Both the position numbers and the translations under genes were made by a program. A model generated the notes under the pieces. It made no database searches, was not told where the DNA came from, and saw only the letters and a list, made by a program, of their open reading frames with translations. Of a stretch of 64,000 nt of DNA, positions 1,189 to 41,850 are shown piece by piece. This DNA comes from Stegostoma tigrinum (taxonomy: Eukaryota). Numbering within the stretch: position 1 is the first letter of the stretch; every line of letters begins with the position of its first letter. The DNA is taken from NCBI RefSeq assembly GCF_030684315.1, contig NC_081387.1, forward strand, positions 5,002,497 through 5,066,496, read 5' to 3'.

Positions 1189-1797
1189 CAGAGATAGTAG
1201 GACCAATGCTGGAGAATCTGAGACAACAAGGTATAGGGCTGGATGAACACAGCAGGCCAAGCAGCATCAGAGGACGAGGAAAGCTGATATTTCAGGCCGA
1301 GACCCTACTTCAGAAATGGGGGAGGGGAAGAGGGTTCTGAAATAAATAGGGAGGGAGGGGTGGTGGATAGAAAATGGATAAAGGAGAAGATAGGTGGAGA
1401 GGAGACAGACAGGTCAAAGAGGCGGCCGCTTCCCTAACCTGTCTTCCTACCTATCCCCTCCTCCCACCTCAAGCCCCAACCCCATCTCCTACATACTAAC
1501 CTCATCCCGTCCCCTTGACCTGTCTGTCCTCCCTGGACTGACCTATCTCCTCCCTACCTCCCCACGTACACTCACCTTTACTGGCTCCAACCCGCCTCTT
1601 TGACCTGTCTGTCTCCTCTCCACCTATCTTTTCCTCTATCCATCTTCTATCCGCCTCCCCCTCTCTCCCTATTTATTTCAGAACCCCCTTCCTCTTCCCC
1701 ATTTCTGAAGAAGGATCTAGGCCTGAAACGTCAGACTTCCTGCTTCTCTGCTGCTGCTTGGCTGCTGTGTTCATCCAGCTGTGCACCTTATTATCTC
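1189..1797. mobile_element. Penelope-like terminal (pLTR) inverted derivative
   Basis: Two opposed copies of the same terminal repeat found at 17757 and 52300-52560. Confidence 0.8.
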
Positions 1798-2475: not shown

Positions 2476-2795
2476 ATAGAGTCGATAGCCAGAGACTATT
2501 TCCCAGGGCAGAAATGGCTAGCACGAGGGGTCATAGTTTTAAGCTGGTTGGTGGAAAGTCTAGAGGGGATGTCAGAGGCAGGTTCTTTACGCAGAGAGTT
2601 GTGAGAGCATGGAATGCGTTGCCAGCAGCAGTTGTGGAAGCAAGGTCATTGGGGTCATTTAAGAGACTGCTGGACATGCATATGGTCACAGAAATTTGAG
2701 GGTGCATCCATGAGGATCAATGGTCGGCACAACATTGTGGGCTGAAGGGCCTGTTCTGTGCTGTACTGTTCTATGTTCTATGTTCTATGTTCTAT
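2476..2795 (+). mobile_element. young CR1 LINE, 3' fragment
   Basis: ORF2 C-terminus MASTRGHSFKL...VTEI, (CTATGTT)n tail and ATTT target duplication. Near-identical to the 14.6, 18.6 and 19.1 kb copies. Confidence 0.93.
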
Positions 2796-13570: not shown

Positions 13571-13927
13571 TCTGATCAAAAACAATCACCTAACAACTCT
13601 AATCCTAAACTCCAGCACTTGGCCTAAAGCCTTATATGTTTAAGCATTGCAGCTGCACATCTAAATGCCTCTTAAATGTGATGAGTGTTTCTGCCTATAC
13701 CACTCTCAAAGGCAATGAGTTCCAGATTCGTACCACCTTCTGGGTGAAAAGGTTTTTCCTCACATCTCCTCCTGTCCTTACCTTAAATCTGTGCCCTTGG
13801 TTATTGATCCCTCCACCAAGGGGAGATGTTTCTTCCTGTCCTATCTATGGCCCTCATAACTTTATATATCTCTGTCATGTCCTTATCATGTCCTGTGTTT
13901 AAGGAAACCAATCCCAGTCTAAACCAA

Positions 13928-14905
13928 CAGGGCTCTGTCCTTGGGCCTCTACTGTTTGTAATTTTTATTAATGACTTGGATGAGGGGATTGAAGGATGGG
14001 TCAGCAAGTTTGCAGACGACACAAAGGTCGGAGGTGTCGTTGACAGTGTAGAGGGCTGTTGTAGGCTGCAGCGGGACATTGACGGGATGCAGAGATGGGC
14101 TGAGAGGTGGCAGATGGAGTTCAACCTGGATAAATGCGAGGTGATGCATTTTGGAAGGTCGAATTTGAAAGCTGAGTACAGGATTAAGGATAGGATTCTT
14201 GGCAGCGTGGAGGAACAGAGGGATCTTGGTGTGCAGATAGATAGATCCCTTAAAATGGCCACCCAAGTGGACAGGGTTGTGAAGAAAGCATATGGTGTTT
14301 TGGCTTTCATTAACAGGGGGATTGAGTTTTAGAGTCGTGAGATCTTGTTGCAGCTCTATAAAACTTTGGTTAGACCGCACTTGGAATACTGCGTCCAGTT
14401 CTGGGCGCCCTATTATAGGAAAGATGTGGATGCTTTGGAGAGGGTTCAGAGGAGGTTTACCAGGATGCTGCCTGGACTGGAGGGCTTATCTTATGAAGAG
14501 AGGTTGACTGAGCTCGGTCTCTTTTCATTGGAGAGAAGGAGGAGGAGAGGGGACCTAATTGAGGTATACAAGATAATGAGAGGCATAGATAGAGTTGATA
14601 GCCAGAGACTGTTTCCCAGGGCAGAAATGGCTAGCACGAGGGGTCATAGTTTTAAGCTGGTTGGTGGAAAGTATAGAGGGAATGTCAGAGGCAGGTTCTT
14701 TACGCAGAGAGTTGTGAGAGCATGGAATGCGTTGCCAGCAGCAGTTGTGGAAGCAAGGTCATTGGGGTCATTTAAGAGACTGCTGGACATGTATATGGTC
14801 ACAGAAATTTGAGGGTGCATACATGAGGATCAATGGTCAGCACAACATTGTGGGCTGAAGGGCCTGTTCTGTGCTGTACTGTTCTATGTTCTATGTTCTA
14901 TGTTC
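13928..14905 (+). mobile_element. young 5'-truncated CR1 inserted in an older minus-strand CR1 (13590-15660)
   Basis: QGSVLGPLLFVIFINDLD...FADD...VTEI, near-identical to 19115-20910 except for a few substitutions including an in-frame stop (AAG to TAG) at ~14330. (CTATGTT)n tail and short CAA duplication. Confidence 0.93.
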
Positions 14906-17900
14906 AATCTCTCTTCACGGCTGAAACTCTCCATTCCGGGCAACATCCTGGCAAATCTCCTGAGCGTATTCTCCAGTGCTATCACATCCACTTTGAATGT
15001 GGATTCCAGAACTGTACTCAATACTCTAGCTGTAGCCTAACCAACTTTTTTTATATAGTTCCAGTATCACCGCCACACTCTATGCCTTGGCTAATAAAGG
15101 CAAGTATCCTATATGCCTCCTTGACTATATCCAACTGTCCTCATACTTTATGTACGTGCACACCAAGGTCCCTCTGATCCTCGGTGCTTCCCAGGGTCTT
15201 ACCATTCATCATGTATTTCCTTTCCTTGCTTGTCCTGCCTAAGTACATCAGCTCACATTTATCCAGACTCAATTCCATTTTCCCCAATCAGATCATCTGA
15301 CTGGCCCTTCTTGATCTTCTTGTAGTCTAAAGCTATCTTCATCACTATTCATCACCCCTCTAATTGTTGTATTGCCTGTGAATTTAGTGATCAACCCTCT
15401 TACACTCAATCTTAATGATTTATGTAAGCCACAAACAGCAAGGGCCCTGACACTGACCCCTGTTGGACCCCGCCGGACACAGACTTCCAGTTGGAAAAAT
15501 ACCCTTCAACCATCATCCTCTGCTTCCTGCCATTTGGCCAATTGCAGATCTAAGTTGCCAAATGTCCTTGGATCCCATGGGCTCTTAACTTTCTTATCAG
15601 TCTGCCATGCAGGACCTTATCAAAAGCCTCAATGAAGTCTAAGATGTCTACATCAAAAGCATTGCTGTCACATGTATGAATGGTGGTGAACAATTAAGCA
15701 ACTCACTGGAAGCGGAGGCTCCACCAATATCCCTATCCTCAATGATGGAACTAGTCAGTACCTCAGTGTGAAAATAAGGCTGAAGCATTCACAGCAATCT
15801 TCAGCTAGAAATGCTAAGAGGTTGATCTGTCTTGGGCCCCTCATAATGCCTCCAACATTACTGATGCCAGCATTCAGCCAATTTAATTCACTCCAAGTGT
15901 TATCAAAATACGGCTGAAGGCACCAAATACTTCCAACATTATGGCCACTGGCACTTTCTAGCATCTGTCTCCAGACGTCAATCGAAGACATGTGCTCCAG
16001 AATTATCCAGAAACCAAGCTATGCTGGTTAGGTACAGCTGCAACACTGGCACCTACACATCAACGTGGAAGAAAGTCCAGGTATGTCCTGTGCACAGGTA
16101 GCATAGTTGTGGTTGTTGGAGGGCAGTCATCTCAGCTCCAGGATTTCTCTGCTAAAGCTCCTCAGAGTAGTGTCCTAGGCCCATCCATCTTTCAGCTGCT
16201 TCGCCAATGACCTTCCTTCCATCCTAAGGTCAGACGTAGGGATGTTGTTGGATGATTGCACGATGTTCAGCATTGTTCATGACTCCTCAGATACTGAAGC
16301 AGTCCATGTTCAAATGTAACAAGACTTGCTCAATATCCAGGCTTAAACGGAAAAGTGGCAAGTAACATTCATGCTACACAATACCAGAAAATGATTACCA
16401 AAGCCAAGAAAAAACCTGATCATCTTGACATTCAATGGCATTATTATTGCTGAATTCCCTACCATCTATATCCTGGAGATAACCATTGATCAGAAGCTGA
16501 GCTGGATGAGTCATATAAATACAGTGGCTACAAGAGCAGGCCAGAGGCTGGGATTCCTGCACCAAGTAACCCACCTCTTGACTCCCTAAAGCTTATCCAC
16601 CATCTACAAGGCTTTAGTCAGGAGCAGCTCCAAAAATGCTTAAGAAGCTGACAGCCTCCATCACGTAGTAGCCCACTTGATTAACACCACACCCTGTCAC
16701 TCCCTCTTCCATGATCTCACAGTAGCAACAGTGTGTACCATCTATAAGATGCACTGTGGAAATTCACCAAATCTCCTTGGACGTCACTTTCCGAACCTAT
16801 GAGCAGTACCATCTAAAAGGACCAGGACATATGAACACCACCTGCAAATTTAAGCCACACATAATCCAGTATTAGAACTCTCTTGCCATTCCTTTATTGT
16901 CGCTGGGTCAAAAATCCTGGAATTCCTCCCGAATGGCAATGTGAGTCAACCGATAGCACATGCAGCAGTTCAGGAAGGTAGCTCACCACCACCTTCACAA
17001 CAGCGGCAGGCCACAAATACTGGCCAGCCAGCGATGATGACACTCCATGAATGAATAAAGGTAAAAGCCTCTGCCTTATGCCTCTGGCCACCAGGTATGA
17101 GATGAGTGTGAATCAAGGCCATACTTTTGTAGCAATTCAATCTTCATCTAAGTTTGTAAAGATATTAGCAGAGGGAATGGTCTCAATCTTTATTTTTACT
17201 GAATGTCAGATTGGGATGGGTTTCCACCTAGTTACAGAATCCTTACACATGATGTTAAATTGATGTTGAAACACAGAATATTGGAACAGGAGTGGGCCAT
17301 TCAACCCTTCAAGCCTGCCCTGCCGTTCACCGTGATCACAGCTGATCATCTAACTCAGTGTCTAGGACCCAGTTCGTCCCCACAACTTTTGATTCCTTTG
17401 GCCCACAGAACCAGATCTAAATCCTTCTTGAAAACCTTCTATGATTTGATTTATTATTGTTACATGTACTGATATATAGTGAAAATTATTGTTTTCCGTG
17501 CTATCCAGGCAAATCATACCTTACCTAGGAACATAAAGGAAACAGAACAGTTGCAGAACATAGTGTTACAGCTACAGAGAAGGTGGAGAGAAAGACCAAA
17601 CTTAATATATGAGAAATCTGTTCATGAATCTGATAACAACGGGGAAGAAGCTGCTGTTCACTTTTTTGGTACACTTTTTCAAACTTTTGAATCTTCTGCC
17701 TGATGGAAGAGGGTGGAAGAGAGTATGATGAGTTGTGCAGAACCTTTGATTATGTTGTACAGCTGGATGAACACATCAGGTCAAGCAGCATCAGAGGGGC
17801 AGGAAAGCTGATATTTTGGGCCTAGACCCTTCTTCAGAAATGGGGGAGAGGAAGAGAGTTCTGAAATAAATAGGGAGAGAGGGGGAAGCGGATATAAGAT

Positions 17901-18241
17901 GGATAGAGGAAAAGATAGGTGGAGAGGGGACAGTCAGGTCAAAGAGGCAGGGATGGAGCCTGTCAAGGTGAGTGTAAGCGAGGACTTAGGAAGGGGAGCC
18001 CAGGGAGGATGGACAGGTCAAGGGGTCGGGAAGAGGTTAGTAGGTAGGAGATGGGTTTGGGGCTTGAGGTTGGAGGAGGAGATAGGTGAGAGGAAGGACA
18101 GGTTAGGGAGGCAGGAACGAGCTGGGCTGGTTTTGGGATGCGGTGGGGGGAGGGGAGATTTTGAAGCTCGTGAAATCCACATTGAGACCACTGGGCTGCA
18201 GGGTTCCCAAGTGGAATATGAGGTGCTGTTCCTGCAACCTT

Positions 18242-18602
18242 TATGCGATTAGACACGAGTTAGGAAGCATGGACTGGGAGCAGTTGTTCCATGGTAAGGG
18301 AACTATAGACATGTGGAGATGGTTTAAGGAACAGTTGTTGGGAGTGATGAGTAAATATGTCCCTCTGAGACAGGCAAGACGGGGTAAGATAAAGGAACCT
18401 TGGATGACGAGAGCGGTGGAGCTTCTAGTGAAAAGGAAGAAGGTAGCTTACATAAGGTGGAGGAAGCTAGGGTCAAGTTCAGCTAGAGAGGATTACATGC
18501 AGGCAAGGAAGGAGCTCAAAAATGGTCTGAGGAGAGCCAGGAGGGGGCACGAGAAAGGCTTGGCAGAAGGAATCCGGGAAAACACAAAGGCATTTTACAC
18601 TT
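18242..18602 (+). mobile_element. 5' portion of young CR1 copy A (continues in 20910->19115)
   Basis: Ends in ...ENTKAFYT, and the minus-strand copy starts YTYVRNKR, so the ORF2 is contiguous across the inversion breakpoint. Confidence 0.9.
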
Positions 18603-18803
18603 AGAGAGTTGTGAGAGCATGGAATGCGTTGCCAGCAGCAGTTGTGGAAGCAAGGTCATTGGGGTCATTTAAGAGACTGCTGGACATGCATATGGTCACA
18701 GAAATTTGAGGGTGCATCCATGAGGATCAATGGTCGGCACAACATTGTGGGCTGAAGGGCCTGTTCTGTGCTGTACTGTTCTATGTTCTATGTTCTATGT
18801 TCT
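18603..18803 (+). mobile_element. short young CR1 3' end (copy B) bridging an inversion breakpoint
   Basis: The last ~200 nt of the same CR1 subfamily with a (CTATGTT)n tail. Confidence 0.9.
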
Positions 18804-19114
18804 AACCGGCACCTTCCCCTGCAACCGCAGGAAGTGCTACACTTGCCCCCACACCTCCTCCCTCACCCCCATCCCAGGCCCCAAGAAGACATACCACATT
18901 AAGCAGAGGTTCACCTGCACATCTGCCAATGTGGTATACTGCTTCCACTGCACCGTTGTGGCTTCCTCTACATTGGGGAAACCAACCTTTGCAGAACAGT
19001 TCGCACTAAACTGCACCTTCCAGTCGCGAATCATTTCGACTCCCCCTCCCATTCCTCAGATGCCATGTCCATCCTGGGTCTCCTGCAGTGCCACAACGAT
19101 GCCACCTGAAGGTT

Positions 19115-20910
19115 AGAACATAGAACATAGAACATAGAACAGTACAGCACAGAACAGGCCCTTCAGCCCACAATGTTGTGCCGACCATTGATCCTCATGG
19201 ATGCACCCTCAAATTTCTGTGACCATATGCATGTCCAGCAGTCTCTTAAATGACCCCAATGACCTTGCTTCCACAACTGCTGCTGGCAACGCATTCCATG
19301 CTCTCACAACTCTCTGCGTAAAGAACCTGCCTCTGACATCCCCTCTATACTTTCCACCAACCAGCTTAAAACTATGACCCCTCGTGCTAGCCATTTCTGC
19401 CCTGGGAAATAGTCTCTGGCTATCGACTCTATCTATGCCTCTCATTATCTTGTATACCTCAATTAGGTCCCCTCTCCTCCTCCTTTTCTCCAATGAAAAG
19501 AGACCGAGCTCAGTCAACCTCTCTTCATAAGATAAGCCCTCCAGTCCAGGCAGCATCCTGGTAAACCTCCTCTGAACCCTCTCCAAAGCATCCACATCTT
19601 TCCTATAATAGGGCGCCCAGAACTGGACGCAGTATTCCAAGTGCGGTCTAACCAAAGTTTTATAGAGCTGCAACAAGATCTCACGACTCTTAAACTCAAT
19701 CCCCCTGTTAATGAAAGCCAAAACACCATATGCTTTCTTAACAACCCTGTCCACTTGGGTGGCCATTTTAAGGGATCTATGTATCTGCACACCAAGATCC
19801 CTCTGTTCCTCCACGCTGCCAAGAATCCTATCCTTAATCCTGTACTCAGTTTTCAAATTCGACCTTCCAAAATGCATCACCTCGCATTTATCCAGGTTGA
19901 ACTCCATCTGCCACCTCTCAGCCCATCTCTGCATCCTGTCAATGTCCCGCTGCAGCCTACAACAGCCCTCTACACTGTCAACGACACCTCCGACCTTTGT
20001 GTCGTCTGCAAACTTGCTGACCCATCCTTCAATTCCCTCGTCCAAGTCATTAATAAAAATTACAAACAGTAGAGGCCCAAGGACAGAGCCCTGTGGAACC
20101 CCACTCACCACTGACTTCCAGGCAGAATATTTTCCTTCTACTACCACTCGCTGTCTTCTGTTGGCCAGCCAATTCTGTATCCAAGCAGCTAAGTTCCCCT
20201 GTATCCCATTCCTCCTGACCTTCTGAATGAGCCTTCCATGGGGAACCTTATCAAATGCCTTACTGAAGTCCATATACACCACATCCACAGCTTGACCCTC
20301 ATCAACCTTACTAGTCACATCCTCAAAAAACTCGATAAGGTTCGTAAGGCATGACCTACCCCTCACAAAGCCGTGTTGACTGTATTTGATCAAGCCATGC
20401 TCTTCCAGATGGTCATAAATCTTATCCCTCAGAATCCTTTCTAACACCTTGCAGACGACAGACGTGAGACTTACCGGTCTATAATTGCCGGGGATTTCCC
20501 TATTTCCTTTCTTGAAGAGAGGAATTACATTTGCCTCTCTCCAGTCCTCAGGTACGACTCCAGTGGAGAGCGAGGATGCAAAGATCTTCGCAAGTGGCGA
20601 AGCAATTGCATTTCTCGCTTCCCAAAGCAGCCGAGGACAAATCTGATCCGGGCCTGGCGACTTGTCAATCTTAATGTTTGACAAAATTTTCAGTACATCA
20701 GCTTCCTCTATCTCTATCCATTCCAGCATGCACACCTGCTCTTCAAAGGTTTCATTCACTACACAGGTCGTTTCTTTCGTAAAGACAGAAGCAAAAAACT
20801 CATTTAGGGCTTCCCCTACCTCCTCAGGCTCCACACACAAGTTCCCTATGCTATCCCTGATCGGCCCTACTCTTTCTTTGACCATTCTCTTATTCCTCAC
20901 GTAAGTGTAA
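19115..20910 (-). mobile_element. 3' portion of young CR1 copy A with an open RT domain
   Basis: Stop-free ORF 19209-20957 with GNYRPVSLTS, DFSKAFDKV, GVPQGSVLGP and FADD. Tail at 19115-19140. Confidence 0.96.
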
Positions 20911-22256
20911 GGTTGTGGTGGGGTTGGAGGGGAATGTGGAGCAGACAAGGGAGTCACGGAGAGAGTGGTCTCTCCGGAAGACAGACAAGGGTGGGGATGG
21001 AAAAACGTCTTTGGTGGTGGGGTCGGATTGCGTCAGATGGCGGAAGTGTTGGAGGATGATGCATTGGATCCGGAGGTTAGTGGGGTAGTACATGATGATG
21101 AGGGGGATTCTGTTTTGGTTGTTGTTGTGGGGACGGGGTGTGAGGGATGAGGTGTGGGAAATGTGGGAGACATGGTCGAGGGTGTTCTCGACCACTGACC
21201 GGGGGAAGTTGCAGTCCTTGAAAAATGAGGACATCTGAGATGTACGGGAGTGGAATGTCTCATCCTGGGGAACGGATGCGGCGAAGGCGAAGGAATTGGG
21301 AATAGGGGATGGAATTTTTGCAGGAAGGTGGGTGGGAGGAGGTGTATTCTAGGTAGCTGTGGGAGTTGGTGGGTTTGAAATGGATATCAGTTTCCAAGTG
21401 GTTGCCAGAGATAGAAACAGAGAGGTCCAGCAAGGAGAGAGAGATATCAGAGATGGTCCAGGTGAACATAAGGTTGGGGTGGAAGGTGTTGGCGAAGTGG
21501 ATGAACTGTTCGAGCTCCTCTTGGGAGCACGAGGTGCCGCCGAAACAATCATCAATGTAACAGAGGAAGAGATGGGGTTTAGGGCTAGTGTAGGTATGGA
21601 AGAGGAATTATCCCACTACAAAGAGGCAGGCGTAGGCAGCCTCATGCGGGTTCCCATGGCCTTCACCTTTGTCTGTAAGAAGTGGGAGGAGTCGAAAGAG
21701 AAGTTGTTAAGGGTGAGGATGAGTTTGGCTGAGCAGATGAGGATATCAGTAACAGGACACTGGTCGGGCCTGCGGGACAGGAAGAAGCGGAGGTCCTTTA
21801 GGCCATCTGCATGGGGAATGCAGGTGTATAGGGACTGGACGTCCATGGTAAAGATGAGGTGTTGGGGACCAGGGAATTGGAAGTTTTGGAGGAGATGGAG
21901 GGCTTGGGTGGTGCCACAGATATAGGTAGTGAGTTCCTGGACTAAGGGGGAGAAAATAGAGTCGAGATAGGTGGAGACAAGTTCGGTGGGGCAGGAGCAG
22001 ACGGAGACAAGGGGCTGACCAGGGCAGGCAGGTTTGTCCTTCCCAAAATCCACAAACCTGATGCTGCTTGGCCTGCCGTGTCCATCCAGCTCTACACCTT
22101 GTTATCTCGGATTCTCCAGCATTGGCAGTTCCTACTATGTTTGATTATGGTAACAGCTTTCCTGAGGCAGTGGCAAGTATAGATGGAGTCTATATAATGG
22201 ATGGAAGGCTAGTTTGCATGATGGACTTGACTGTGTTCACAACACTGTAATTTCTT

Positions 22257-25200
22257 AGACAGAGACCTGATAGATGTCTACAAAATCATGCTGGGTATAG
22301 ACAAGGTGGATAGTAAGAAGCTTTTTCCCAGAGCAGGGGACTCAATTACGATGAGTCATGAGTTCAAAGTGAGAGGAGGAAAGTTTAAGGGAGAGATGCG
22401 TGGAAAGTTCTTTACGCAGAGGGTGGTGGGTGCCTGGAACGCGTTGCTAGCGGAGGTGGTAGATGCAGACACGTTAGTGTCTTTTAAGATGTTTCTGGAC
22501 GGGTACATAGATGGGCAGGGAGCAGAGGGATACAGACCCCTAGAAAATAGATAGAACATAGAACATAGAACATTACAGCACAGTACAGGCCCTTCGGCCC
22601 TCGATGTTGTGCCGACCTGTCATACCGATCTCAAACCCATCTAACCTACACTATTCCATGTACGTCCATATGCTTATTGAATGACGTCTTAAATGTACCT
22701 AAAGTTGGCAAATCTACTACCATTGCAGGCAAAGCGTTCCATTCCCTTACTACTCTCTGAGTAAAGAAACTACCTCTGACATCTGTCCTATATCTTTCAC
22801 CCCTCAATTTAAAGCTATGCCGCCTCGTGCTCGCTGTCACCATCCTAGGAAAAAGGCTCTCCCTATCCACCCTATCTAACCCTCTGATTATTTTATATGT
22901 TTCAATTAAGTCACCTCTCAATCTTCTTCTCTCTAATGAAAACAGCCTCAAGTCCCTCAGCCTTTCCTCGTAAGACCTTCCCTCCATACCAGGCAACATC
23001 CTAGTAAATCTCCTCTGCACGCTTTCCAAAGCTTCCACATCCTTCTTATAATGCGGTGACCAGAACTGTACACAATACTCCAAGTGCGGCCGCACCAGAG
23101 TTTTGTACAGCTTCACCATAACCTCTTGGTTCTGGAACTCAATCCCTCTATTAATAAAAGCTAAAACACTGTATGCTTTCTTAACAGTCCTGTCAACGTG
23201 GGTGGCAACTTTCAAGGATCTGTGTACATGGACACCGAGATCTCTCTGCTCATCTACACTACTAAGAATCTTACCATTTGCCCTGTACTTTGCCTTCCGG
23301 TTACTCCTACCAAAGTGCATCACCTCACACTTGTCTGCATTAAACTCCATTTGCCACCTCTCAGCCCAGCTCTGCAGCTTATCTATGTCTCTCTGCAACC
23401 TACAGCATCCTTTGTCACTATCCACAACTCCACCTACCTTAGTGTCATCTACAAATTTACTAACCCATCCTTCTACACCCTCATCCAGGTCATTTATAAA
23501 AATGACAAACAGCAGTGGACCCAACACCGACCCTTGCGGTACACCACTAGTAACTGGTCTCCAGGATGAACATTTCCCATCAACTACCACCCTCTGTCTT
23601 CTTTCAGCAAGCCAATTTCCGATCCAAACTGCTATATCTCCCACAATTCCATTCCTCCGCATTTTGTACAATAGCCTATTGTGAGGAATCTTATCGAACG
23701 CCTTGCTGAAATCCATATACACCACATCAACCGGTTTACTCTCATCTACCTGTTTGGTCACCTTCTCAAAGAACTCAATAAGGTTTGTGAGGCATGACCT
23801 TCCCTTCACAAAACCGTGCTGACTATCCCTAATCAATTTATTCTTTTCTAGAAGATTATAAATCCGATCCCTTATAACCTTTTCCAACACTTTACCAGCA
23901 ACTGAGGTAAGGCTCACTGGTCTATAATTACCAGGGTTGTCTCTACTCCCCTTCTTGAACAGGGGAACCACATTTGCTATCCTCCAGTCATCTGGCACTA
24001 TTCCTGTAGACAATGACGAGTTAAAGATCAATGCCAAAGGCTCGGCAATCTCCTCCCTGGCTTCCCAGAGGATCCGAGGATAAATCCCATCCGGCCCAGG
24101 GGACTTATCTATCTTCACCCTCTGAAGGATTTCTAATACCTCTTCCTTGTGAACCTCAATCCCACCTAGTCTAGTAGCCTGTATCTCAGTATTCTCCTCG
24201 ACAACATTATCGTTTTCTAGAGTGAATACTGTTGAAAAATATTCATTTCGTGCTTCCCCTATCTCATCTGACTCCACACACAACTTACTACTACTATCCT
24301 TGATTGGGCCTAATCTTACTTTCGTCATTCTTTTATTCCTTAAATACCTATAGAAAGCCTTAGGGTTTACCCTGATCCTATCCGCCAACAAATTCTCATG
24401 TCTCTTCCTGGCTCTTCTGAGCTCTCTCTTTAGGTCTTTCCTGGCTACCTCATAGCCCTCAAGTGCCCTAAGTGAGCCTTCACATCTCATCCTAACATAA
24501 GCCTTCTTCTTCCTCTTGACCAGAGATTCCACCTCCTTCGTAAACCACGGCTCCCGCACTCTACAGCTTCCTCCCTGCCTGACAGGTACATACTTATCTA
24601 GGACACACAGGAGCTTTTCCTTGAATAAGCTCCACATTTCTAATGTGCCCATCCCCTGCAGTTTCCTTCCCCATCCTATGGTCCCTAAATCTTGCCTAAT
24701 ATCATCGCAATTGCCTTTCCCCCAGCTATAACTCTTGCCCAGTGGTATACACCTATCCCTTTCCATCACTAAAGTAAACATAGCAGAATTGTGATCGCTA
24801 TCACCAAAGTGCTCACCTACTTCCAAATCTAACACCTGGCCGGGCTCATTACCCAGTACCAAATCTAATGTGGCTTCGCCCCTTGTTGGCCTATCTACAT
24901 ACTGTGTCAGGAAGCCCTCCTGCACACACTGGACAAAAACTGACCCATCTATAGTACTCAAACTATAGTGTTCCCAGTCAATGTTTGGAAAGTTGAAGTC
25001 CCCCATGACAACTACCCTGTCTCTGTCACTCCTATCGAGAATCATCTTTGCTATCCTTTCCTCTACATCTCTGGAACTATTCGGAGGCCTATAGAAAACT
25101 CCCAACAGGGTGACCTCTCCTTTCCTGTTTCTAACCTCAGCCCATACTACCTCAGTTGACGAGTCCCCAAACATCCTTTCTGCAACTGTAATACTGTCCT

Positions 25201-25610
25201 TGACCAACAATGCCACACCTTCACCTCTTTTACCATCTTCTCTGTTCTTACTGAAACATCTAAATCTCAGAACCTGCAACAACCATTCCTGACCCTGCTC
25301 TATCCATGTCTCTGAAATGGCCACAACATCGAAGTCCCAGGTACTAACCCATGCTGCAAGTTCACCCACCTTATTCCGGACGCTCCTGGCATTGAAGTAG
25401 ACACACTTCAATCCAACTTCTTGCTTGCCAGTGCCATCTTGCATCCCTGAAACTTTATTTCGGACCACCCTACTCTCAACCTTTTCTATACTCAAACTAC
25501 AATTTCGACTATTGTAGTTGATAGGCTTAGACAGAGGATCTCGATGGGCATAGGCTTGGAGGGCCGAAGGGCCTGTTTCTGTGCTGTAATTTTCTTTGTT
25601 CTTTGTTCTT
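22257..25610 (+). mobile_element. CR1 3' fragment split by the 22555-25519 insertion
   Basis: 22257-22554 rejoins 25520-25610. (CTTTGTT)n tail and TTCTT duplication. Confidence 0.85.
22555..25519 (-). mobile_element. CR1 LINE with uninterrupted ORF2 (APE endonuclease + RT), 5'-truncated
   Basis: FNARS..ISETW..GDFN..SDH endonuclease motifs followed by RT (FVDD), stop at 22646. TSD gatag at 22550-22554 and 25520-25524. Confidence 0.96.
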
Positions 25611-25894
25611 GCGGTCTTGGGCACAGCCATTGCCTTATCAAGCTGTAATAGGATGTTTTCTATGGTGCATCTGTAAAAATTTGTCAGAGTGATTGTGGAC
25701 ATGCCAAATTTCCTTCGCCTTCTGTAGACATAGAGATGTTGGTGTGCTTTCTTAACCATGTGGATGGACCACCTCCAGCTCACTACCGTTGGTACAGACA
25801 GGAACATGTCCTCCTCTCTGCTTTCTGAAGTGGATGATCAGCACTTTCATTTTGCTGACATTGAGGGAGAGATTGTTGTCTTTACACGGTGCAG

Positions 25895-37461: not shown

Positions 37462-40400
37462 GAGCAGCAAAGTTGATATTTCAGGTCAGGACCCTCCTTC
37501 AGGAATGAAGGAGGGGGAAGGGAGCTCTGAAATAAAGAGGGATGGGGTTGTGAGGATGGGGAAGATAGGTGGGATGGTGATAGGTGAGTGGAGGTAGGTA
37601 GTGGTGGGGATTGGTCAGTGAGATGGGAGGAACAGATAGGTGGGAGAGAAGATGGACAGGTTGTTTCAGGTCAAAGAGGCAGGGATGAGAGAGATGGCTG
37701 GTCATGGGTTGAGGCTGTGTTTGGGGAAATTTTGAAACTGGTAAAGTCCACATTGAGATCATTGCATTATAGGCTCCTAAGGCGGAATATGAGGTGCTGC
37801 TCCTCCAGTTTCCAGATGGCATCATTGTGACACTGGAGGAGACCCAGGATGGACATGTCACCCAGGGAGTGGGAGGAGGATTTGAAGTAGTTTGCATCTG
37901 GGAGGTGAGATAACAACGTGTGAAGCTGGATGAACACAGCAGGCCAATCAGCATCTTAGGAGCACAAAAGCTGACGTTTTGGGCCTAGACCTTACATCAG
38001 AGAGGGGGATGGGGAGAGGATTCTGAAATAAATAGGGAGAAGTGGGGAGGTGAACTGAAGATGGATAGAAGAGAAGATGTGTGGGGAGGTAGGGTGTGAA
38101 TATGTCAGTCCAGGGAGGACAGACATGTCAAGGGGGCAGGATGAGGTTAGTAGGTAGGAAATGGAGGCACAGCTTGAGGTTGGAGGAGGGGTTAGGTGAG
38201 AGGAAGAACAGGTTAGGGAGGCGGAAACGAGCTGATCTGGTTTTTGAATGCAGTGGGGGGAGGGGAGATTTTGAAGCTTGTGAAATCCACATTGATACCA
38301 TTGGGCTGCAGGGCTCCCAAGCGGAATATGAATTGCTGTTCCTGCAACCTTCGGGTGGCATCATTATGGCACTGCAGGAGGCCCAGGATGGACATGTCAT
38401 CTGAGGAATGAGAGGGGGAGTTAAAATGGTTCACGACTGGGAGGTGCAGTTGTTTATTGCAAACCGAGCGGAGGTGTTCTGCAAAGCGGTCCCCAAGCCT
38501 CCTCTTGGTTTCCCCAATGTAGAGGTAGCCACACCGGGTACAGCAGATGCAGTATACCACATTGGCAGATGTGCAGGTGAACATCTGCTTGATGTGGAAA
38601 GTCATCTTGGGGCCTGGGATAGGGGTGAGGGAGGAGGTGTGTGGGCAAGTGTAGCATTTCCTGCGGTTGCAGGGGAAAGTGCCGGGTATGTTGGGGTTGG
38701 AGGGGTGTGTGGAGCGGACAAGGGAGTCACGGAGAGAGTGGTCTTTCCAGAAAGCAGACAAGGGTGGGGATGGAAAAATGTTTTTAGTGGTGGGGTTGAA
38801 TTGTAGATGGTGGAAGTGTTGGAGGATGATGCGTTGTACCCGGAAGTTGGTGGGGTGGTATGTGAAGACTAGGGGGATTCTGGTTTGGTGGTTATTGCGG
38901 TGGGCGGAGTGTGAGAGATGTGTTGTGGGAAATGCGGGAGACACGGTCGAGGGCATTCTCGGGAGCAGACACAGCAGAGGCAGAGAAATTGGAAGTAGTG
39001 GATTGCAGTCTTCTAGAAAAGGTGGGTAAGAGGAGATATAGTCCAGGTACCTGTGGGAGTCGGTGGGCATGAAATAGATATCGGTTGAGGTGGTCACAAG
39101 AGATGGGGACAGAGAAGTCCACTAAGGAGAGAGACGTATTAGAGATGGTCCAAGTGACCTTGAGATTGGGATGAAAGGTGTTAATAAAATTGATGAACTG
39201 TTCAAGTTCCTCATGGGAGCATGAGGCAGTGCTGATACAGTTATCGATGTAATGGAGGAAGAAGTGGGGGTTGGGGGAGGGTCCAGTGTAGCTGCAGAAG
39301 AGGGACTGTTCCACGTATACTACAAAGAGACAGGCCACCACTGACATCAACCCACCCACTGCCAACGTCACCCCTAACTCCACCCCCACAGCCACCATAT
39401 CCACATCCAGTCCCAGTGTCCAGCCCTGCCAGGTCTTCACCATCACCCCAGACCTCCCCCTCACTGAGGACGAAATGTCAGTCCTCAGTAAAGTGTTCAC
39501 CTTCATTCCTCTGCACCCACACATCAACAAATACTGTTCACGTTTGGACTTGGAACACCATTTCTGCCACTGCACCTATTTCTTTAACCAGGGGTCTAAC
39601 CCACCTTCCATAGACCCCTTCTCCCACCTCCAACACACCCCCTCCTCCTGGACATCACCACAAGGCCTCCGATCCTCCCTTAACCTCTTCATCTCCAACT
39701 GCCGTCAAGACATTGATCACCTCAACCTCTCCCCAAGAATGTGCAGCCCTCCACTCCAATCCCAACCTCACCATCAAACCCGCAGTGGTAGTATGGCGCA
39801 CTGACCTCTACATCGCCAGGGCCAGACGCCAACTCTCCGACACCTCCTCCTACCGCCCCCTTGATCATGACCCCACCCCGGAGCACCAAACCATCATCTT
39901 CCAAACCATCCACAACCTCCTCACCTCAGGTGACCTCCCACCTACAGCCTCCAACCTCATTGTTCCCCAACCCCGCACCACCCGCTTCTATCTCCTTCCC
40001 AAAAATCCACAAACTTGACTGTTTCAGCCAACCCATTGTCTCTGCCTGCTCCTGCCCCACCAAACCTATCCCTGCTTACCCTGGACTCTATTTTCTCCCC
40101 CAGCCCAGGAATTCTTCACCTGTGTCTGGGACACCACCCACATCCTCGACCTACTCCAAGACATGGCCCCTAACACCCTCATCCTCATTATGGACATTCA
40201 ATCCCGATATACTTGCATCCCCCATGCAGATGGCCTAAAAGCCCTCTGCTTCTTCCCCTCCTGCAGGCCCAACTGTTCCCCCTGCACCGACACCCTCATC
40301 CACTTGACGGAGCTCATCCTTACCTTTAACAACTTATCCTTCAACTCCTCCCACTTCCTCCAGACGAAAGGGATGGCCATGGGCACCCACATGGGCCCAA

Positions 40401-41850
40401 GCTATGCCTGCCTCTTTGTAGGTTACGTGGAACAGTCCCTCTTCTGTAGCTACACTGGCCCCATCCCTCGCCTCTTCCTCTGTTACATTGATGGCTGTAT
40501 TAGCATTGCCTCGTGCTCCCACAAGGAGCTCGAACAGTTCATCCACTTCACTAACACCTTTCACCCAAACCTCAAGTTCGCCTGGACCATCTGACTCACT
40601 CTTCTTCCTGGACCCCTCAGTCTCCATCTCTGGTAACCACCTTGAAACCGATATCTATTTCGAGCCCACCGACTCCCGCACGGCACCTCTTACGCACCTT
40701 CCTGCAAGATTGCAATTCTCTACTTCCAATTCCTCTAGCTCCACCATGTCTGCTCTCAAGATGAGGCATTCCACTCCTGAACATCCCAGATATCCTCGTA
40801 TTTCAAGGACCACCCTTCAGTGGTCAAAAATGCTCTTACGTTTCCCACACCCGCTCCCTGCAGCAAAATCAAAGACAGAATTACCCCTTGTCCTCACATA
40901 TCACCCCACTAACCTTTGTGTTCAATGAATCATTCTCCACCACCTCCAATCTGACCTCACTTTCTCTCCCCACCCATACCTGCCTTCTGGAGCGAACCTA
41001 CGTCTCTGTGACACCCTCATCCCTCCACACTTCCCACTAGCCCCACCACCTTCCCCTGCAACTGCAGGAGTTACTATACCTGCCCCTACACCTCTCTCCC
41101 CCCCCCCCCCCAACAAAAACAAAAATCCTTCCACATTAGACAGATGTTCACCCTCATATCCGCTCATGTCGTATATTGTATCCGCTGCGGCCACCTCTAC
41201 ATTGGTGAGGCCAAGCAGAGGATCAGAGAATACTCAGACTTGCGCTTGGTTTGTGACAATGACAACACCTTCCAGTTGAGAACCACTTCAAACACCCCTC
41301 CCATTCCCTGGATGGCATTTCCATCCTGGGCCGTTTCCAGGGTTGCAATAATGCCTCCCGGAAACTGGAGGAGCAGCACCTCATGTTGGAGTTTGGTTAA
41401 GCGGATGAGGATGTCAGTGGAGGGGGAACCAGTTGGGCCTGTGGGAGAGGAAGAAGCGGAGGGCTTTTAGGCCTACCATGTGTGGGATACAAGTGTACAG
41501 GGATTGAATGTCCCTAATGAAGGGGTTTTGTGGGCTAGAGAACGGAGTGTCTCAATGTGGACTTGACCAGTTTTCATATCTCCCCAACCCCATCCCAAGA
41601 GCAACCCTCCTTCCCAATCCCACCCCCTTGACTTGTCAGTCTTTCCCACCTATTTGCTCCTCCCATCTAAAAATTTATCAAACCCCACCACTGCCTACCT
41701 GCACTCATCTATCACCATCCCACTTACCTTCCCCAAGCCTACTCCTCTCCCCATTTATTTGCAGCTCCCTTCTCCCAATTCTGTAGAAGGGTCCCACTCC
41801 GCTCCTCCAGCTCCACACCTGACTCAAGCATTGGCAGTTCTTACTGTCTC
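37462..41850. mobile_element. large inverted Penelope-like complex (RT + GIY-YIG), minus then plus segments
   Basis: ORF 38213-39097(-) has VVYCICCTRCGYLYIGETKRRLGDRFAEH, and the + strand has RT KGMAMGTHMGPSYACLFVGYVE..YIDG. Flanked by a near-perfect repeat tag(a/g)aaaattagag at 37448-37461 and 41851-41864. Confidence 0.9.

What the first reader, a model, noticed from the sequence alone, without database searches (positions are those of the whole stretch)
18236..20914. Retrotransposition-mediated ~2.3-kb inversion with swapped target-site duplications
Seen in sequence: the Penelope piece 18804-19114 is reversed relative to its flanks. CR1 copy A is split, with its 5' part (18242-18602, +) continuing exactly into 20910->19115 (-). 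Three short duplications are all present as inverted pairs: aacctt 18236-41 / aaggtt 19109-14 (TSD of copy A), ttacactta 18595-18603 / taagtgtaa 20902-10 (staggered break inside copy A), and aacc 18804-07 / ggtt 20911-14 (target site of copy B). Flipping 18603-20910 restores a continuous CR1 ORF2 and a colinear Penelope. Inference: copy B primed at the Penelope site but its 5' end was joined to a second staggered cut ~2.1 kb away, giving an inversion with one insert-bridged and one empty junction. The junction offsets do not fit homologous recombination between the two CR1 copies. Rearrangements of this type are known for mammalian L1, but I do not know a worked germline example for shark CR1.
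Basis: partly seen in the sequence, partly recalled or inferred. Interest (0 to 1): 0.8.

Follow-up and report, generated by a model that had tools for sequence, protein, structure and literature searches.

The report
CR1-linked small inversion in Penelope element
A young CR1 jumping gene sitting in an old Penelope element has been broken and partly turned around, with short duplicated target sites split between the two junctions, which is the scar expected when a retrotransposon insertion goes wrong and inverts DNA, a process known for human L1 but not documented for CR1.

Summary
Two other Penelope copies in the window show that 18808-19108 is reversed and fits exactly between its flanks. 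A CR1 paralog ORF and a contig from another species show that 18242-18602 (+) continues into 20910->19115 (-), with 9 bp present twice. A 201-nt CR1 3' end (copy B) bridges one junction and is 100% identical to copy A's 3' end.

A retrotransposition-linked inversion is the best reading (about 0.67 in all), but not the only one. The same sequence can be read as a 311-bp Penelope fragment inverted between two CR1 "bridges" that carry halves of one element, as described for synchronous L1 insertions in tumours. If only the 303-bp spacer is flipped, both CR1 pieces gain ordinary direct duplications. A DNA-only fold-back copy also fits.

Reads could not confirm the junctions: paralogs swamped the one read-laying run. 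This is a new member of a known kind, of moderate interest.

The parts
17756..18241 (-). Penelope-like element, 3' (C-terminal) part, called P1; its sense strand is minus
   Evidence: Aligns on the same strand to Penelope copies R2 (37924-38351) and R1 (50747-50892). R2's coding strand there is minus.
18236..18241 (+). AACCTT, left copy of the 6-bp target-site duplication of CR1 copy A
   Evidence: Present once in R1 and R2 (CTGCAACCTTCAGG / CTGCAACCTTCGGG). Present here also as AAGGTT at 19109-14.
18242..18602 (+). CR1 copy A, 5' part (A5'): the linker between the endonuclease and the RT. CR1 homology starts at 18243.
   Evidence: Residues 3-119 align to 370-486 of the 1053-aa CR1 ORF2 paralog with 0 gaps. 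Paralog contigs run on upstream of 18243 (loose ends).
18595..18603 (+). TTACACTTA, first copy of the 9-bp duplication at the break inside copy A
   Evidence: There is a single copy in a colinear contig of the family (record 29).
18603..18803 (+). CR1 copy B: a 201-nt 3' end of the element (end of ORF2, the 3' UTR and the heptamer tail). Base 18603 is shared with the 9-mer.
   Evidence: 201 of 201 identical to 19315-19115 and to copy C at 2593-2793. The tail TGTTCTA x 4.0 lies at 18777-18804.
18804..18807 (+). AACC, an inverted copy of GGTT 20911-14. It can be read as target-site duplication of copy B, or equally as the first 4 bases of copy A's duplication copied along with B.
18808..19108 (+). 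Penelope-like piece P2 (zinc-finger-like and GIY-YIG region), reversed relative to P1 and P3
   Evidence: Aligns in reverse to R1 50893-51214 and R2 38354-38683. Its + strand translation matches R2's minus-strand ORF, 71% identity.
19109..19114 (-). AAGGTT, right copy of copy A's 6-bp duplication, now inverted
19115..20910 (-). CR1 copy A, middle and 3' part (1796 nt). ORF2 is open from 20909 to the stop at 19209-19211 and holds the RT domain.
   Evidence: Residues 1-562 align to paralog residues 486-1047, 72% identity, 0 gaps. RVT_1 E=2.6e-35. The tail lies at 19114-19141.
20902..20910 (-). TAAGTGTAA, second (inverted) copy of the 9-bp duplication
20911..20914 (+). GGTT, native Penelope bases at the P2/P3 boundary (GGGT in R1 and R2)
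20911..22017 (-). Penelope-like element, upstream (RT-side) part, called P3
   Evidence: Aligns to R1 from 51215, to R2 from 38684, and to 41049-40029.
18603..19315 (.). Perfect 205-nt inverted repeat (18603-18807 / 19111-19315) around a 303-nt spacer

Best explanation
Two steps. First, a 5'-truncated CR1 of about 2.16 kb (copy A) inserted normally into an old Penelope-like element, making a 6-bp duplication (AACCTT). Later, a second CR1 RNA of the same young family began target-primed reverse transcription 311 bp downstream, from the DNA 3' end ...CCGGTT. After about 201 nt, the cDNA end was joined to a second staggered break 2.1 kb away inside copy A, not to the other side of its own target. 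The other two ends were joined directly to each other.

The result is an inversion of 18603-20910 with one CR1-bridged junction (18603-18803) and one empty junction (20910/20911). The 6-, 9- and 4-bp duplications are left as inverted pairs.

Shown: the final structure, the colinearity of both elements after un-inversion, and the duplications. Inferred: the RNA origin of copy B, the order of events, and the nature of the break inside copy A.
For: - Penelope is colinear only if 18808-19108 is reversed. AACCTT is single in 2 of 2 reference copies, and the GGTT-equivalent is single in both.
- The two CR1 halves abut without a gap on the paralog ORF, with a 9-bp overlap. One colinear family contig has a single 9-mer (record 29).
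- Copy B is exactly a 3'-terminal CR1 fragment with its tail against the target, as TPRT makes.
- Both new junctions have 0-1 nt of microhomology, read directly from the sequence.
- The family is young and active enough: copies C and D are 99.7% and 98.6% identical to A, and A's 566 codons are open.
- After TGTTCT, the target starts with AAC in 3 of 8 CR1-type tails in the window. The shared AACC may therefore reflect nick-site preference.
- L1 precedents exist. Three insertions came with inversion of genomic DNA at the reciprocal end in an L1 expression model (PMC11702581, passages). Reciprocal inversions with L1 bridges and split duplications were found in tumours (bioRxiv 10.1101/2024.08.27.596794, section 9).
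Against: - No read, contig or second assembly was shown to carry the five junctions.
- No allele or species with copy A un-inverted was found.
- Copy B and copy A's 3' end are identical over 205 nt, including the same tail end point and the next 4 bases. Copies C and D end their tails 3 nt later and 1 nt earlier. This identity is what a DNA copy of A's own end would give.
- The break inside copy A has no independent explanation. The bases at it do not match the ...TT nick context seen at the tails if the overhangs were 3' (read from the sequence).
- Nick-site preference rests on only 8 tails.
Confidence: 0.4

Rival explanations
1. One event: two synchronous CR1 insertions.
- CR1 endonuclease cut both strands at two sites 311 bp apart: the bottom strand after AAGGTT and the top strand after CCGGTT.
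- Both 3' ends of the freed Penelope fragment primed reverse transcription on CR1 tails.
- One cDNA ran 1796 nt. The other ran 201 nt, then continued on the uncopied 5' part of the first RNA by template switch or second-strand synthesis in trans, giving a 9-nt overlap.
- The fragment was re-joined inverted. Alternatively it was re-joined in place, and the 303-bp spacer was flipped later by recombination between the 205-nt arms.

On this reading only 311 bp of host DNA are inverted, and copy A never existed as an intact insertion.
For: - Both tails abut the two ends of the 311-bp fragment, and both priming ends read GGTT-3'.
- The two CR1 halves lie in opposite orientation and overlap by 9 bp. 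This resembles the internal duplications of twin priming: 17% (283 of 1,703) of 5'-inverted L1 insertions carry one.
- Flipping the spacer alone gives direct AACCTT..AACCTT and GGTT..GGTT around the two pieces, with Penelope fully colinear.
[quoted passage not shown] Ten of 13 reciprocal translocations came from two synchronous insertions.
- The two tails are identical in length and the arms show zero divergence.
Against: - It needs two priming events, two RNAs and a template switch with only 1 nt of microhomology (read from the sequence).
- Un-inverting 18603-20910 gives a completely ordinary insertion with a 6-bp duplication. A single-event history would produce that only by coincidence.
- Template switching of this kind has not been shown for CR1.
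- The figures and supplements of the L1 papers could not be seen, so the match to their models rests on text alone.
Confidence: 0.27
2. DNA repair only, with no second retrotransposition. Copy A was present. Two staggered double-strand breaks (9 bp and 4 bp) freed the 2.1-kb fragment. Its resected 3' end ...GGTT folded back onto AACC, the start of copy A's own duplication 307 nt upstream on the same strand. It was extended for 201 nt, copying copy A's 3' end in inverted orientation. The fragment was then re-joined inverted by end joining.
For: - It explains in one stroke the 100% identity over 205 nt, the identical tail end point and the shared AACC.
- The AACC site lies 307 nt from the fragment's 3' end.
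- Fold-back templated insertions at breaks, completed by end joining with 0-5 bp of microhomology, are documented in yeast (PMC11724301, passages).
- Templated insertions and inversions also occur at L1-induced breaks.
Against: - The documented fold-back insertions were 2 to about 150 bp, most under 14 bp, with a 41-nt loop and a 10-nt microhomology. Here the figures would be 201 nt, a 303-nt loop and 4 nt.
- A nearer AACC, 104 nt from the end, was not used.
- The copied segment starts exactly at the retrotransposon's tail. TPRT makes this automatic; fold-back would give it only by luck of where AACC lies.
- GGTT must still be duplicated by a staggered cut.
- The two breaks have no stated cause.
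Confidence: 0.18
3. Assembly artefact. The region is mis-joined, or the 303-bp spacer between the two perfect 205-nt arms is given in the wrong orientation.
For: - The perfect inverted repeat belongs to a very abundant young family. About 196,000 and 283,000 contigs of the two same-species runs were laid on the 4.2-kb stretch at 90% likeness.
- No junction-specific support was obtained.
Against: - A mis-join would not create base-exact 9-bp and 4-bp duplications at the junctions, nor leave both elements exactly complete.
- Even with the spacer in the other orientation, copy A stays split, with halves on opposite strands.
- The window has no N.
- A 713-bp structure is easily spanned by long reads, if the assembly used them. 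That is not known here.
Confidence: 0.07

Closest known systems
L1 retrotransposition-mediated reciprocal inversions with L1 bridges (bioRxiv 10.1101/2024.08.27.596794; abstract, passages and section 9 read)
   Same: An inverted host segment. Retroelement fragments with their tails at the breakpoints. Target-site duplications split between the two junctions (the paper's 'heteroduplication'). Two halves of one element on different junctions, meeting at a shared breakpoint. Junctions with and without an insert.
   Different: Those are somatic, in human tumours, made by L1 with poly(A) tails and TTTT/A nick sites. The spans are megabases and the duplications 18-419 bp. Here the event is fixed in an assembled germline genome. 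The element is CR1-like with a heptamer tail, the span is 0.3 or 2.3 kb, and the duplications are 4-9 bp. Their figures and supplements were not seen.
Small inversions and templated insertions at L1 insertion sites in an inducible L1 cell model (PMC11702581; passages read)
   Same: Kilobase-scale or smaller inversion of genomic DNA next to a 5'-truncated insertion, attributed to processing and mis-joining of the ends made during TPRT. The junctions have c-NHEJ-like features.
   Different: Three cases only, in cultured human cells. Their exact structures are in Figs S9 and S10, which could not be read. Whether any has split duplications like this one is unknown to me.
Twin priming (Ostertag and Kazazian 2001; seen only as a cited reference and as described)
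   Same: Two parts of one LINE in opposite orientation that meet at adjacent template positions with a small internal duplication (9 bp here).
   Different: In twin priming both parts lie inside one insertion flanked by one direct duplication, and no host DNA lies between them. Here 311 bp of host DNA and a second 3' end lie between the halves, and the outer flanks carry different duplications.
Staggered-break model of inversions with inverted duplications at both breakpoints (Drosophila work; recalled, from no call)
   Same: Each breakpoint's short duplication appears once outside and once, inverted, inside the far end of the inverted segment.
   Different: That model needs no retroelement and does not explain the CR1 3' end at one junction.
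Fold-back templated insertions at double-strand breaks (PMC11724301; abstract and passages read)
   Same: An inverted copy of nearby sequence, primed by a short microhomology at a resected end and then captured by end joining.
   Different: The reported sizes are 2 to about 150 bp, most under 14 bp, in yeast. Here the copy would be 201 nt with a 303-nt loop.

Membership tests
LINE retrotransposition-mediated inversion | A host segment is inverted relative to its flanks | tested here: met
   18808-19108 is reversed against 2 of 2 reference Penelope copies. The joined pieces align as one HSP to each.
LINE retrotransposition-mediated inversion | A 5'-truncated retroelement with its 3' tail directly against one breakpoint | tested here: met
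   Copy B, 201 nt, has its tail TGTTCTA x 4.0 ending at 18803/4 against AACC.
LINE retrotransposition-mediated inversion | The target-site duplication is split between the two junctions, in inverted orientation | tested here: met
   AACC 18804-07 / GGTT 20911-14. AACCTT/AAGGTT and the 9-mer pair behave the same way.
LINE retrotransposition-mediated inversion | The breakpoint lies at the element's preferred endonuclease nick site | tested here: inconclusive
   Only 8 CR1-type tails are in the window. AAC follows TGTTCT in 3 of 8, and AA follows the tail in 4 of 8. No genome-wide logo was obtainable.
LINE retrotransposition-mediated inversion | The bridging insert came from RNA and not from neighbouring DNA | tested here: inconclusive
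   The insert is identical to the neighbouring copy over 201 nt plus the next 4 bases and has the same tail end. It is also 201 of 201 identical to the distant copy C. Neither origin is excluded.
LINE retrotransposition-mediated inversion | The pre-event allele exists (un-inverted, without the bridging insert) | not testable with these tools
The exact ORF look-up was blank.
Twin priming insertion | One insertion flanked by one direct target-site duplication, with the 5' part inverted and no host DNA inside | tested here: not met
   311 bp of Penelope and a second 3' end lie between the halves. The outer flanks carry AACCTT and GGTT.
Twin priming insertion | The inverted halves meet at adjacent template positions, with a small deletion or duplication | tested here: met
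   The halves end and begin at paralog residue 486-487, with a 9-bp overlap.
Inversion by recombination between inverted repeats | The breakpoints lie inside the two homologous arms and no new duplications arise | tested here: not met
   The arms (18603-18807 / 19111-19315) bound only the 303-bp spacer. Flipping it does not rejoin copy A, and the 9-bp and 4-bp duplications lie outside such an exchange. It could still have flipped the spacer as a later step.
CR1-clade LINE | ORF2 with an AP-type endonuclease and a reverse transcriptase | tested here: met
   The paralog 22649-25807 (-) has Exo_endo_phos E=3.8e-19 and RVT_1 E=1.4e-35. Copy A has RVT_1 E=2.6e-35 and is 72% identical to the paralog.
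CR1-clade LINE | A 3' end with a short microsatellite tail instead of poly(A), and a conserved 3' UTR hairpin | tested here: inconclusive
   The tail is met: heptamer x 4.0, against an octamer in amniote CR1 (PMC4316615, passage). The hairpin is not shown: the 98-nt 3' end folds no better than shuffles, z = -0.25.
CR1-clade LINE | Phylogenetic placement of the RT within CR1, as against L2, Rex1 and other clades | not tested
No tree was built.
Penelope-like element | RT followed by a C-terminal GIY-YIG endonuclease | tested here: inconclusive
   In the intact copy R2, GIY-YIG scores 22.7 bits against a cut-off of 22.6. RVT_1 scores 25.4 bits, below the 29.6 cut-off, and in another copy (40163-40591). 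The local pieces themselves gave no Pfam hit but match R2's ORF.

The most novel reading that the evidence does not exclude
The structure records a single germline event in which a CR1 particle cut a Penelope element twice, 311 bp apart. Both ends of the freed fragment primed reverse transcription, and the two growing cDNAs shared one RNA between them. This would be the synchronous-insertion mechanism just described for L1 in human tumours, here operating in the germline of a cartilaginous fish with a LINE of a different clade that needs no poly(A). If so, mis-resolved LINE insertion intermediates are a general, ancient source of balanced rearrangements in vertebrates. A side effect is a perfect 205-bp inverted repeat of the active family's 3' end, which if transcribed could act as a hairpin source of small RNAs against that family.
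Probability: 0.27. Interest if true: 0.6.

Novelty: new member of a known kind. Interest (0 to 1): 0.45.

Why it matters
LINE-driven inversions with split target-site duplications have so far been worked out for human L1, mostly in tumours and cell models. One search found 52 papers holding at least 4 of its 6 terms (CR1, chicken repeat 1, retrotransposition-mediated, inversion, rearrangement, TPRT). Of the 12 listed, none of the eight that hold CR1 also holds 'retrotransposition-mediated'. A base-exact germline example from a CR1-type element would show that the same mis-joining of insertion intermediates occurs outside L1 and outside cancer. It would also give a sequence signature (tail at a breakpoint, duplications as inverted pairs, two halves of one element on opposite strands) that can be searched for genome-wide in CR1-rich genomes of sharks, birds and reptiles. 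As a single locus without read support, it is an anecdote until that survey is done.

Tried and rejected
- Read support. The one read-laying run (four runs, 90% likeness, 17500-21700) laid about 196,000 and 283,000 contigs from the two same-species runs. Nearly all were paralogs of the Penelope and CR1 families. The listed joints (for example 18806/20914 and 18241/19106 on opposite strands) are what colinear paralogs give and say nothing about this locus. No piece specific to the five junctions was listed.
- Runs of other organism labels (X1, X5) gave only CR1 and Penelope paralog contigs. One 184-nt contig of organism A joins P2 to P3 colinearly, but with 9 differences in 117 nt on one side. 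I take it for a paralog, not the empty orthologous site.
- An exact look-up of six ORFs that span the junctions found none of the 6 in the collection.
- A scan of metagenome contigs for the CR1 3' end, meant to collect more tails and target sites, gave 0 hits.
- Earlier notes of the scan: nothing near the locus bears on it. Two word searches gave only notes on a CR1 frameshift.
- Recombination between the 205-nt arms as the sole cause is rejected, because it flips only the spacer.
- Classical twin priming is rejected as such, because host DNA lies between the halves.
- Two independent ordinary insertions (the spacer-flipped reading) are rejected as a full explanation. The internal deletion of one piece starts within 9 bp of where the other piece ends, which unrelated events would give very rarely. 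This is inference.
- A significant 3' UTR hairpin was not found.
- Pfam found nothing in the local Penelope pieces, so the label rests on the better copy R2.
- The figures and supplements of the L1 papers could not be seen. Figs S9 and S10 of PMC11702581 and the supplementary figures of the tumour study may hold closer matches than I could judge.
- PMC5389967 was opened for twin priming in a CR1-rich lizard and held only a reference.

Full report
WHAT IS THERE. The stretch 17756-22017 is an old Penelope-like element whose sense strand is minus. A young CR1-type LINE sits inside it. Reading left to right:
- Penelope part P1 runs to 18241 and ends in AACCTT.
- CR1 sense-strand sequence follows at 18242-18602 (A5').
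- Next, with one shared base, comes the last 201 nt of the same CR1 family in the same orientation (copy B, 18603-18803). It ends in four copies of the heptamer TGTTCTA.
- AACC follows at 18804-07.
- A 301-nt Penelope piece (P2, 18808-19108) follows.
- AAGGTT follows at 19109-14.
- Then come 1796 nt of CR1 on the minus strand (19115-20910), tail first.
- GGTT and Penelope part P3 run from 20911.
The arms 18603-18807 and 19111-19315 are a perfect 205-nt inverted repeat with a 303-nt spacer. The window has no N.

CHECK OF THE OBSERVATION. All six short strings are at the stated coordinates.

Penelope. Two other copies in the window serve as rulers: R1 at 50747-51492 and R2 at 37924-39335. In both, P1 aligns forward up to the single AACCTT, P2 aligns in reverse immediately after it, and P3 aligns forward immediately after that. 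P1 and reversed P2 overlap on the rulers by exactly the 6 bases AACCTT. At the P2/P3 boundary the rulers read GCCGGGTGTGG, the same length as the local sequence with one GGTT. The three local pieces, joined in memory with one copy of each duplication, align as a single HSP to R1 (80.0%) and to R2 (84.4%). At protein level, P2 translated on the plus strand matches residues 139-206 of a 294-aa minus-strand ORF of R2 (71% identity). That ORF reaches the Pfam GIY-YIG cut-off (22.7 against 22.6 bits).

CR1. A 1053-aa ORF2 paralog in the window (22649-25807, minus; endonuclease plus RT) is the ruler. A5' aligns to its residues 370-486, and the minus-strand part aligns to residues 486-1047. Both alignments have zero gaps. 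The two parts are therefore adjacent and overlap by the 9 bases TTACACTTA. A 717-nt contig from a run labelled as another organism joins 18594 directly to 20910 on the other strand. A colinear member of the same young family thus has the 9-mer once (record 29).

The minus-strand part is an open frame of 566 codons with RVT_1 (E = 2.6e-35).

One small correction: CR1 homology starts at 18243. The T at 18242 matches neither element (loose ends).

WHAT COULD NOT BE CHECKED. Whether the assembly is right here.
- The single read-laying run was swamped. About 196,000 and 283,000 contigs of the two same-species runs were laid on 4.2 kb at 90% likeness, because both element families are very abundant. 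The tables show only what paralogs show.
- None of six junction-spanning ORFs is in the protein collection.
I rate an artefact as unlikely on internal grounds. A mis-join does not make base-exact 9- and 4-bp duplications or leave both elements exactly complete. Even with the spacer in the other orientation, the CR1 stays split.

HOW IT MOST LIKELY AROSE.
- Copy A, about 2.16 kb and 5'-truncated, inserted with a 6-bp duplication.
- Later a CR1 RNA was reverse-transcribed from the 3' end ...CCGGTT, 311 bp downstream of copy A.
- After 201 nt the cDNA end was joined to a second, 9-bp staggered break inside copy A.
- The two remaining ends were joined without an insert.
Both new junctions have 0-1 nt of microhomology (read), as in end joining.

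The family is young enough for this. Copy C (2476-2793) is 99.7% and copy D (13927-14905) is 98.6% identical to A.

Comparable outcomes are in print for L1.
- An inducible L1 cell model gave three insertions with inversion of genomic DNA at the reciprocal end. It also gave small inversions attributed to end processing before ligation (PMC11702581, passages).
- A long-read tumour study describes reciprocal inversions with one or two L1 bridges, flanked by split duplications (bioRxiv 10.1101/2024.08.27.596794, section 9).
- Reporter assays show L1 cDNA intermediates recombining with distal breaks, including one inversion (PMC13526784, passages).

THE SAME LETTERS READ ANOTHER WAY.

First, the structure can equally be described as a 311-bp Penelope fragment (18804-19114) inverted between two CR1 bridges. 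The left bridge is A5' plus copy B. The right bridge is the 1796-nt part. Both tails abut the fragment, so both of its 3' ends, each reading GGTT, would have primed reverse transcription. A5' and the 1796-nt part are two halves of one element on opposite strands with a 9-bp overlap. [quoted passage not shown] It finds that two synchronous insertions are the commoner route (10 of 13 reciprocal translocations).

Second, if only the 303-bp spacer is flipped, Penelope is fully colinear and both CR1 pieces carry ordinary direct duplications, AACCTT..AACCTT and GGTT..GGTT. Two facing insertions resolved in place, followed by a flip between the 205-nt arms, would therefore give the present sequence. 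Two unrelated insertions would not explain why one piece's internal deletion starts where the other piece ends.

Third, copy B plus the next four bases is an exact copy of copy A's 3' end plus the first four bases of its duplication, with the same tail end point. Copies C and D end their tails 3 nt later and 1 nt earlier. A resected 3' end ...GGTT folding back onto that AACC, 307 nt upstream on the same strand, and being extended, would make copy B with no RNA at all. Against this:
- Documented fold-back insertions are 2 to about 150 bp, mostly under 14 bp (PMC11724301).
- A nearer AACC at 104 nt was not used.
- TPRT automatically starts at the tail.
For TPRT, the shared AACC needs a nick-site preference. 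In the window AAC follows TGTTCT in 3 of 8 CR1-type tails, which is suggestive but thin.

ODDS. Two-step TPRT-coupled inversion 0.40. Single synchronous event 0.27. DNA-only fold-back 0.18. Artefact 0.07. The remainder is unassigned. Retrotransposition-linked inversion in either form is about 0.67.

COMPARISON AND NOVELTY. The kind is known: LINE insertion intermediates mis-joined to give balanced rearrangements with split target-site duplications. It is not classical twin priming, because host DNA lies between the halves and there is no single direct duplication. It is not recombination between inverted repeats.

What is new is the setting. The element is a CR1-type LINE with a heptamer tail, not L1 with poly(A). 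It is resolved to the base.

One literature search found 52 papers holding at least 4 of its 6 terms (CR1, chicken repeat 1, retrotransposition-mediated, inversion, rearrangement, TPRT). Of the 12 listed, none of the eight that hold CR1 also holds 'retrotransposition-mediated'. The library misses many subscription papers, so this is not proof of absence.

The CR1 label itself rests on EN plus RT domains and the microsatellite tail (PMC4316615). No tree was built, and a significant 3' hairpin was not found.

VERDICT. A real-looking and unusually clean scar of an inversion tied to CR1 activity, ordinary in kind but new for this clade of elements. Its exact history, and its presence in reads, remain to be shown.

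Noticed in passing
window 22646-25807 (-), with 22264-22554 (+): A CR1 paralog with an uninterrupted 1053-aa ORF2 (endonuclease plus RT), about 72% identical to copy A. Its tail ends at 22551, directly inside the 3' end of an older CR1-like copy that runs the other way (ORF 22288-22554 +). This is a second place in the window where two CR1 3' ends face each other.
   Followed up: partly
window 2476-2793 (+) and 13927-14905 (+): Two more 5'-truncated copies of the same young CR1 family, 99.7% and 98.6% identical to copy A. Their tails end 3 nt later and 1 nt earlier than those of copies A and B. Copy C seems to have a 4-bp duplication (ATTT). Copy D has no clear one.
   Followed up: partly
runs X1 and X5 laid on window 18243-20910: Runs labelled as two other organisms hold contigs of this CR1 family that are almost identical to copy A: 5 differences in 1194 nt in one run, and 5 in 1160 nt and 6 in 600 nt in the other. 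The active family is therefore shared across species labels, through close kinship, very slow divergence or transfer.
   Followed up: no
window 18603-19315: The perfect 205-nt inverted repeat with a 303-nt loop could flip its spacer by recombination. If transcribed, it could form a long hairpin RNA matching the 3' end of the active CR1 family.
   Followed up: no
window 38213-39097 (-): Penelope copy R2 keeps a 294-aa open frame through the zinc-finger-like and GIY-YIG region. At least five further Penelope fragments of the same family lie in the window (1428-1785, 40029-41049, 50747-52547 and others), some in head-to-head arrangement.
   Followed up: partly
window 18117-18155: Many contigs of the same-species runs show a 'goes back 39' joint here, which is a 38-39-nt tandem duplication variant inside other copies of the Penelope family.
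   Followed up: no
window 18602-18604: The junction of A5' with copy B keeps the CR1 reading frame but creates a TAG stop codon exactly at the joint.
   Followed up: yes
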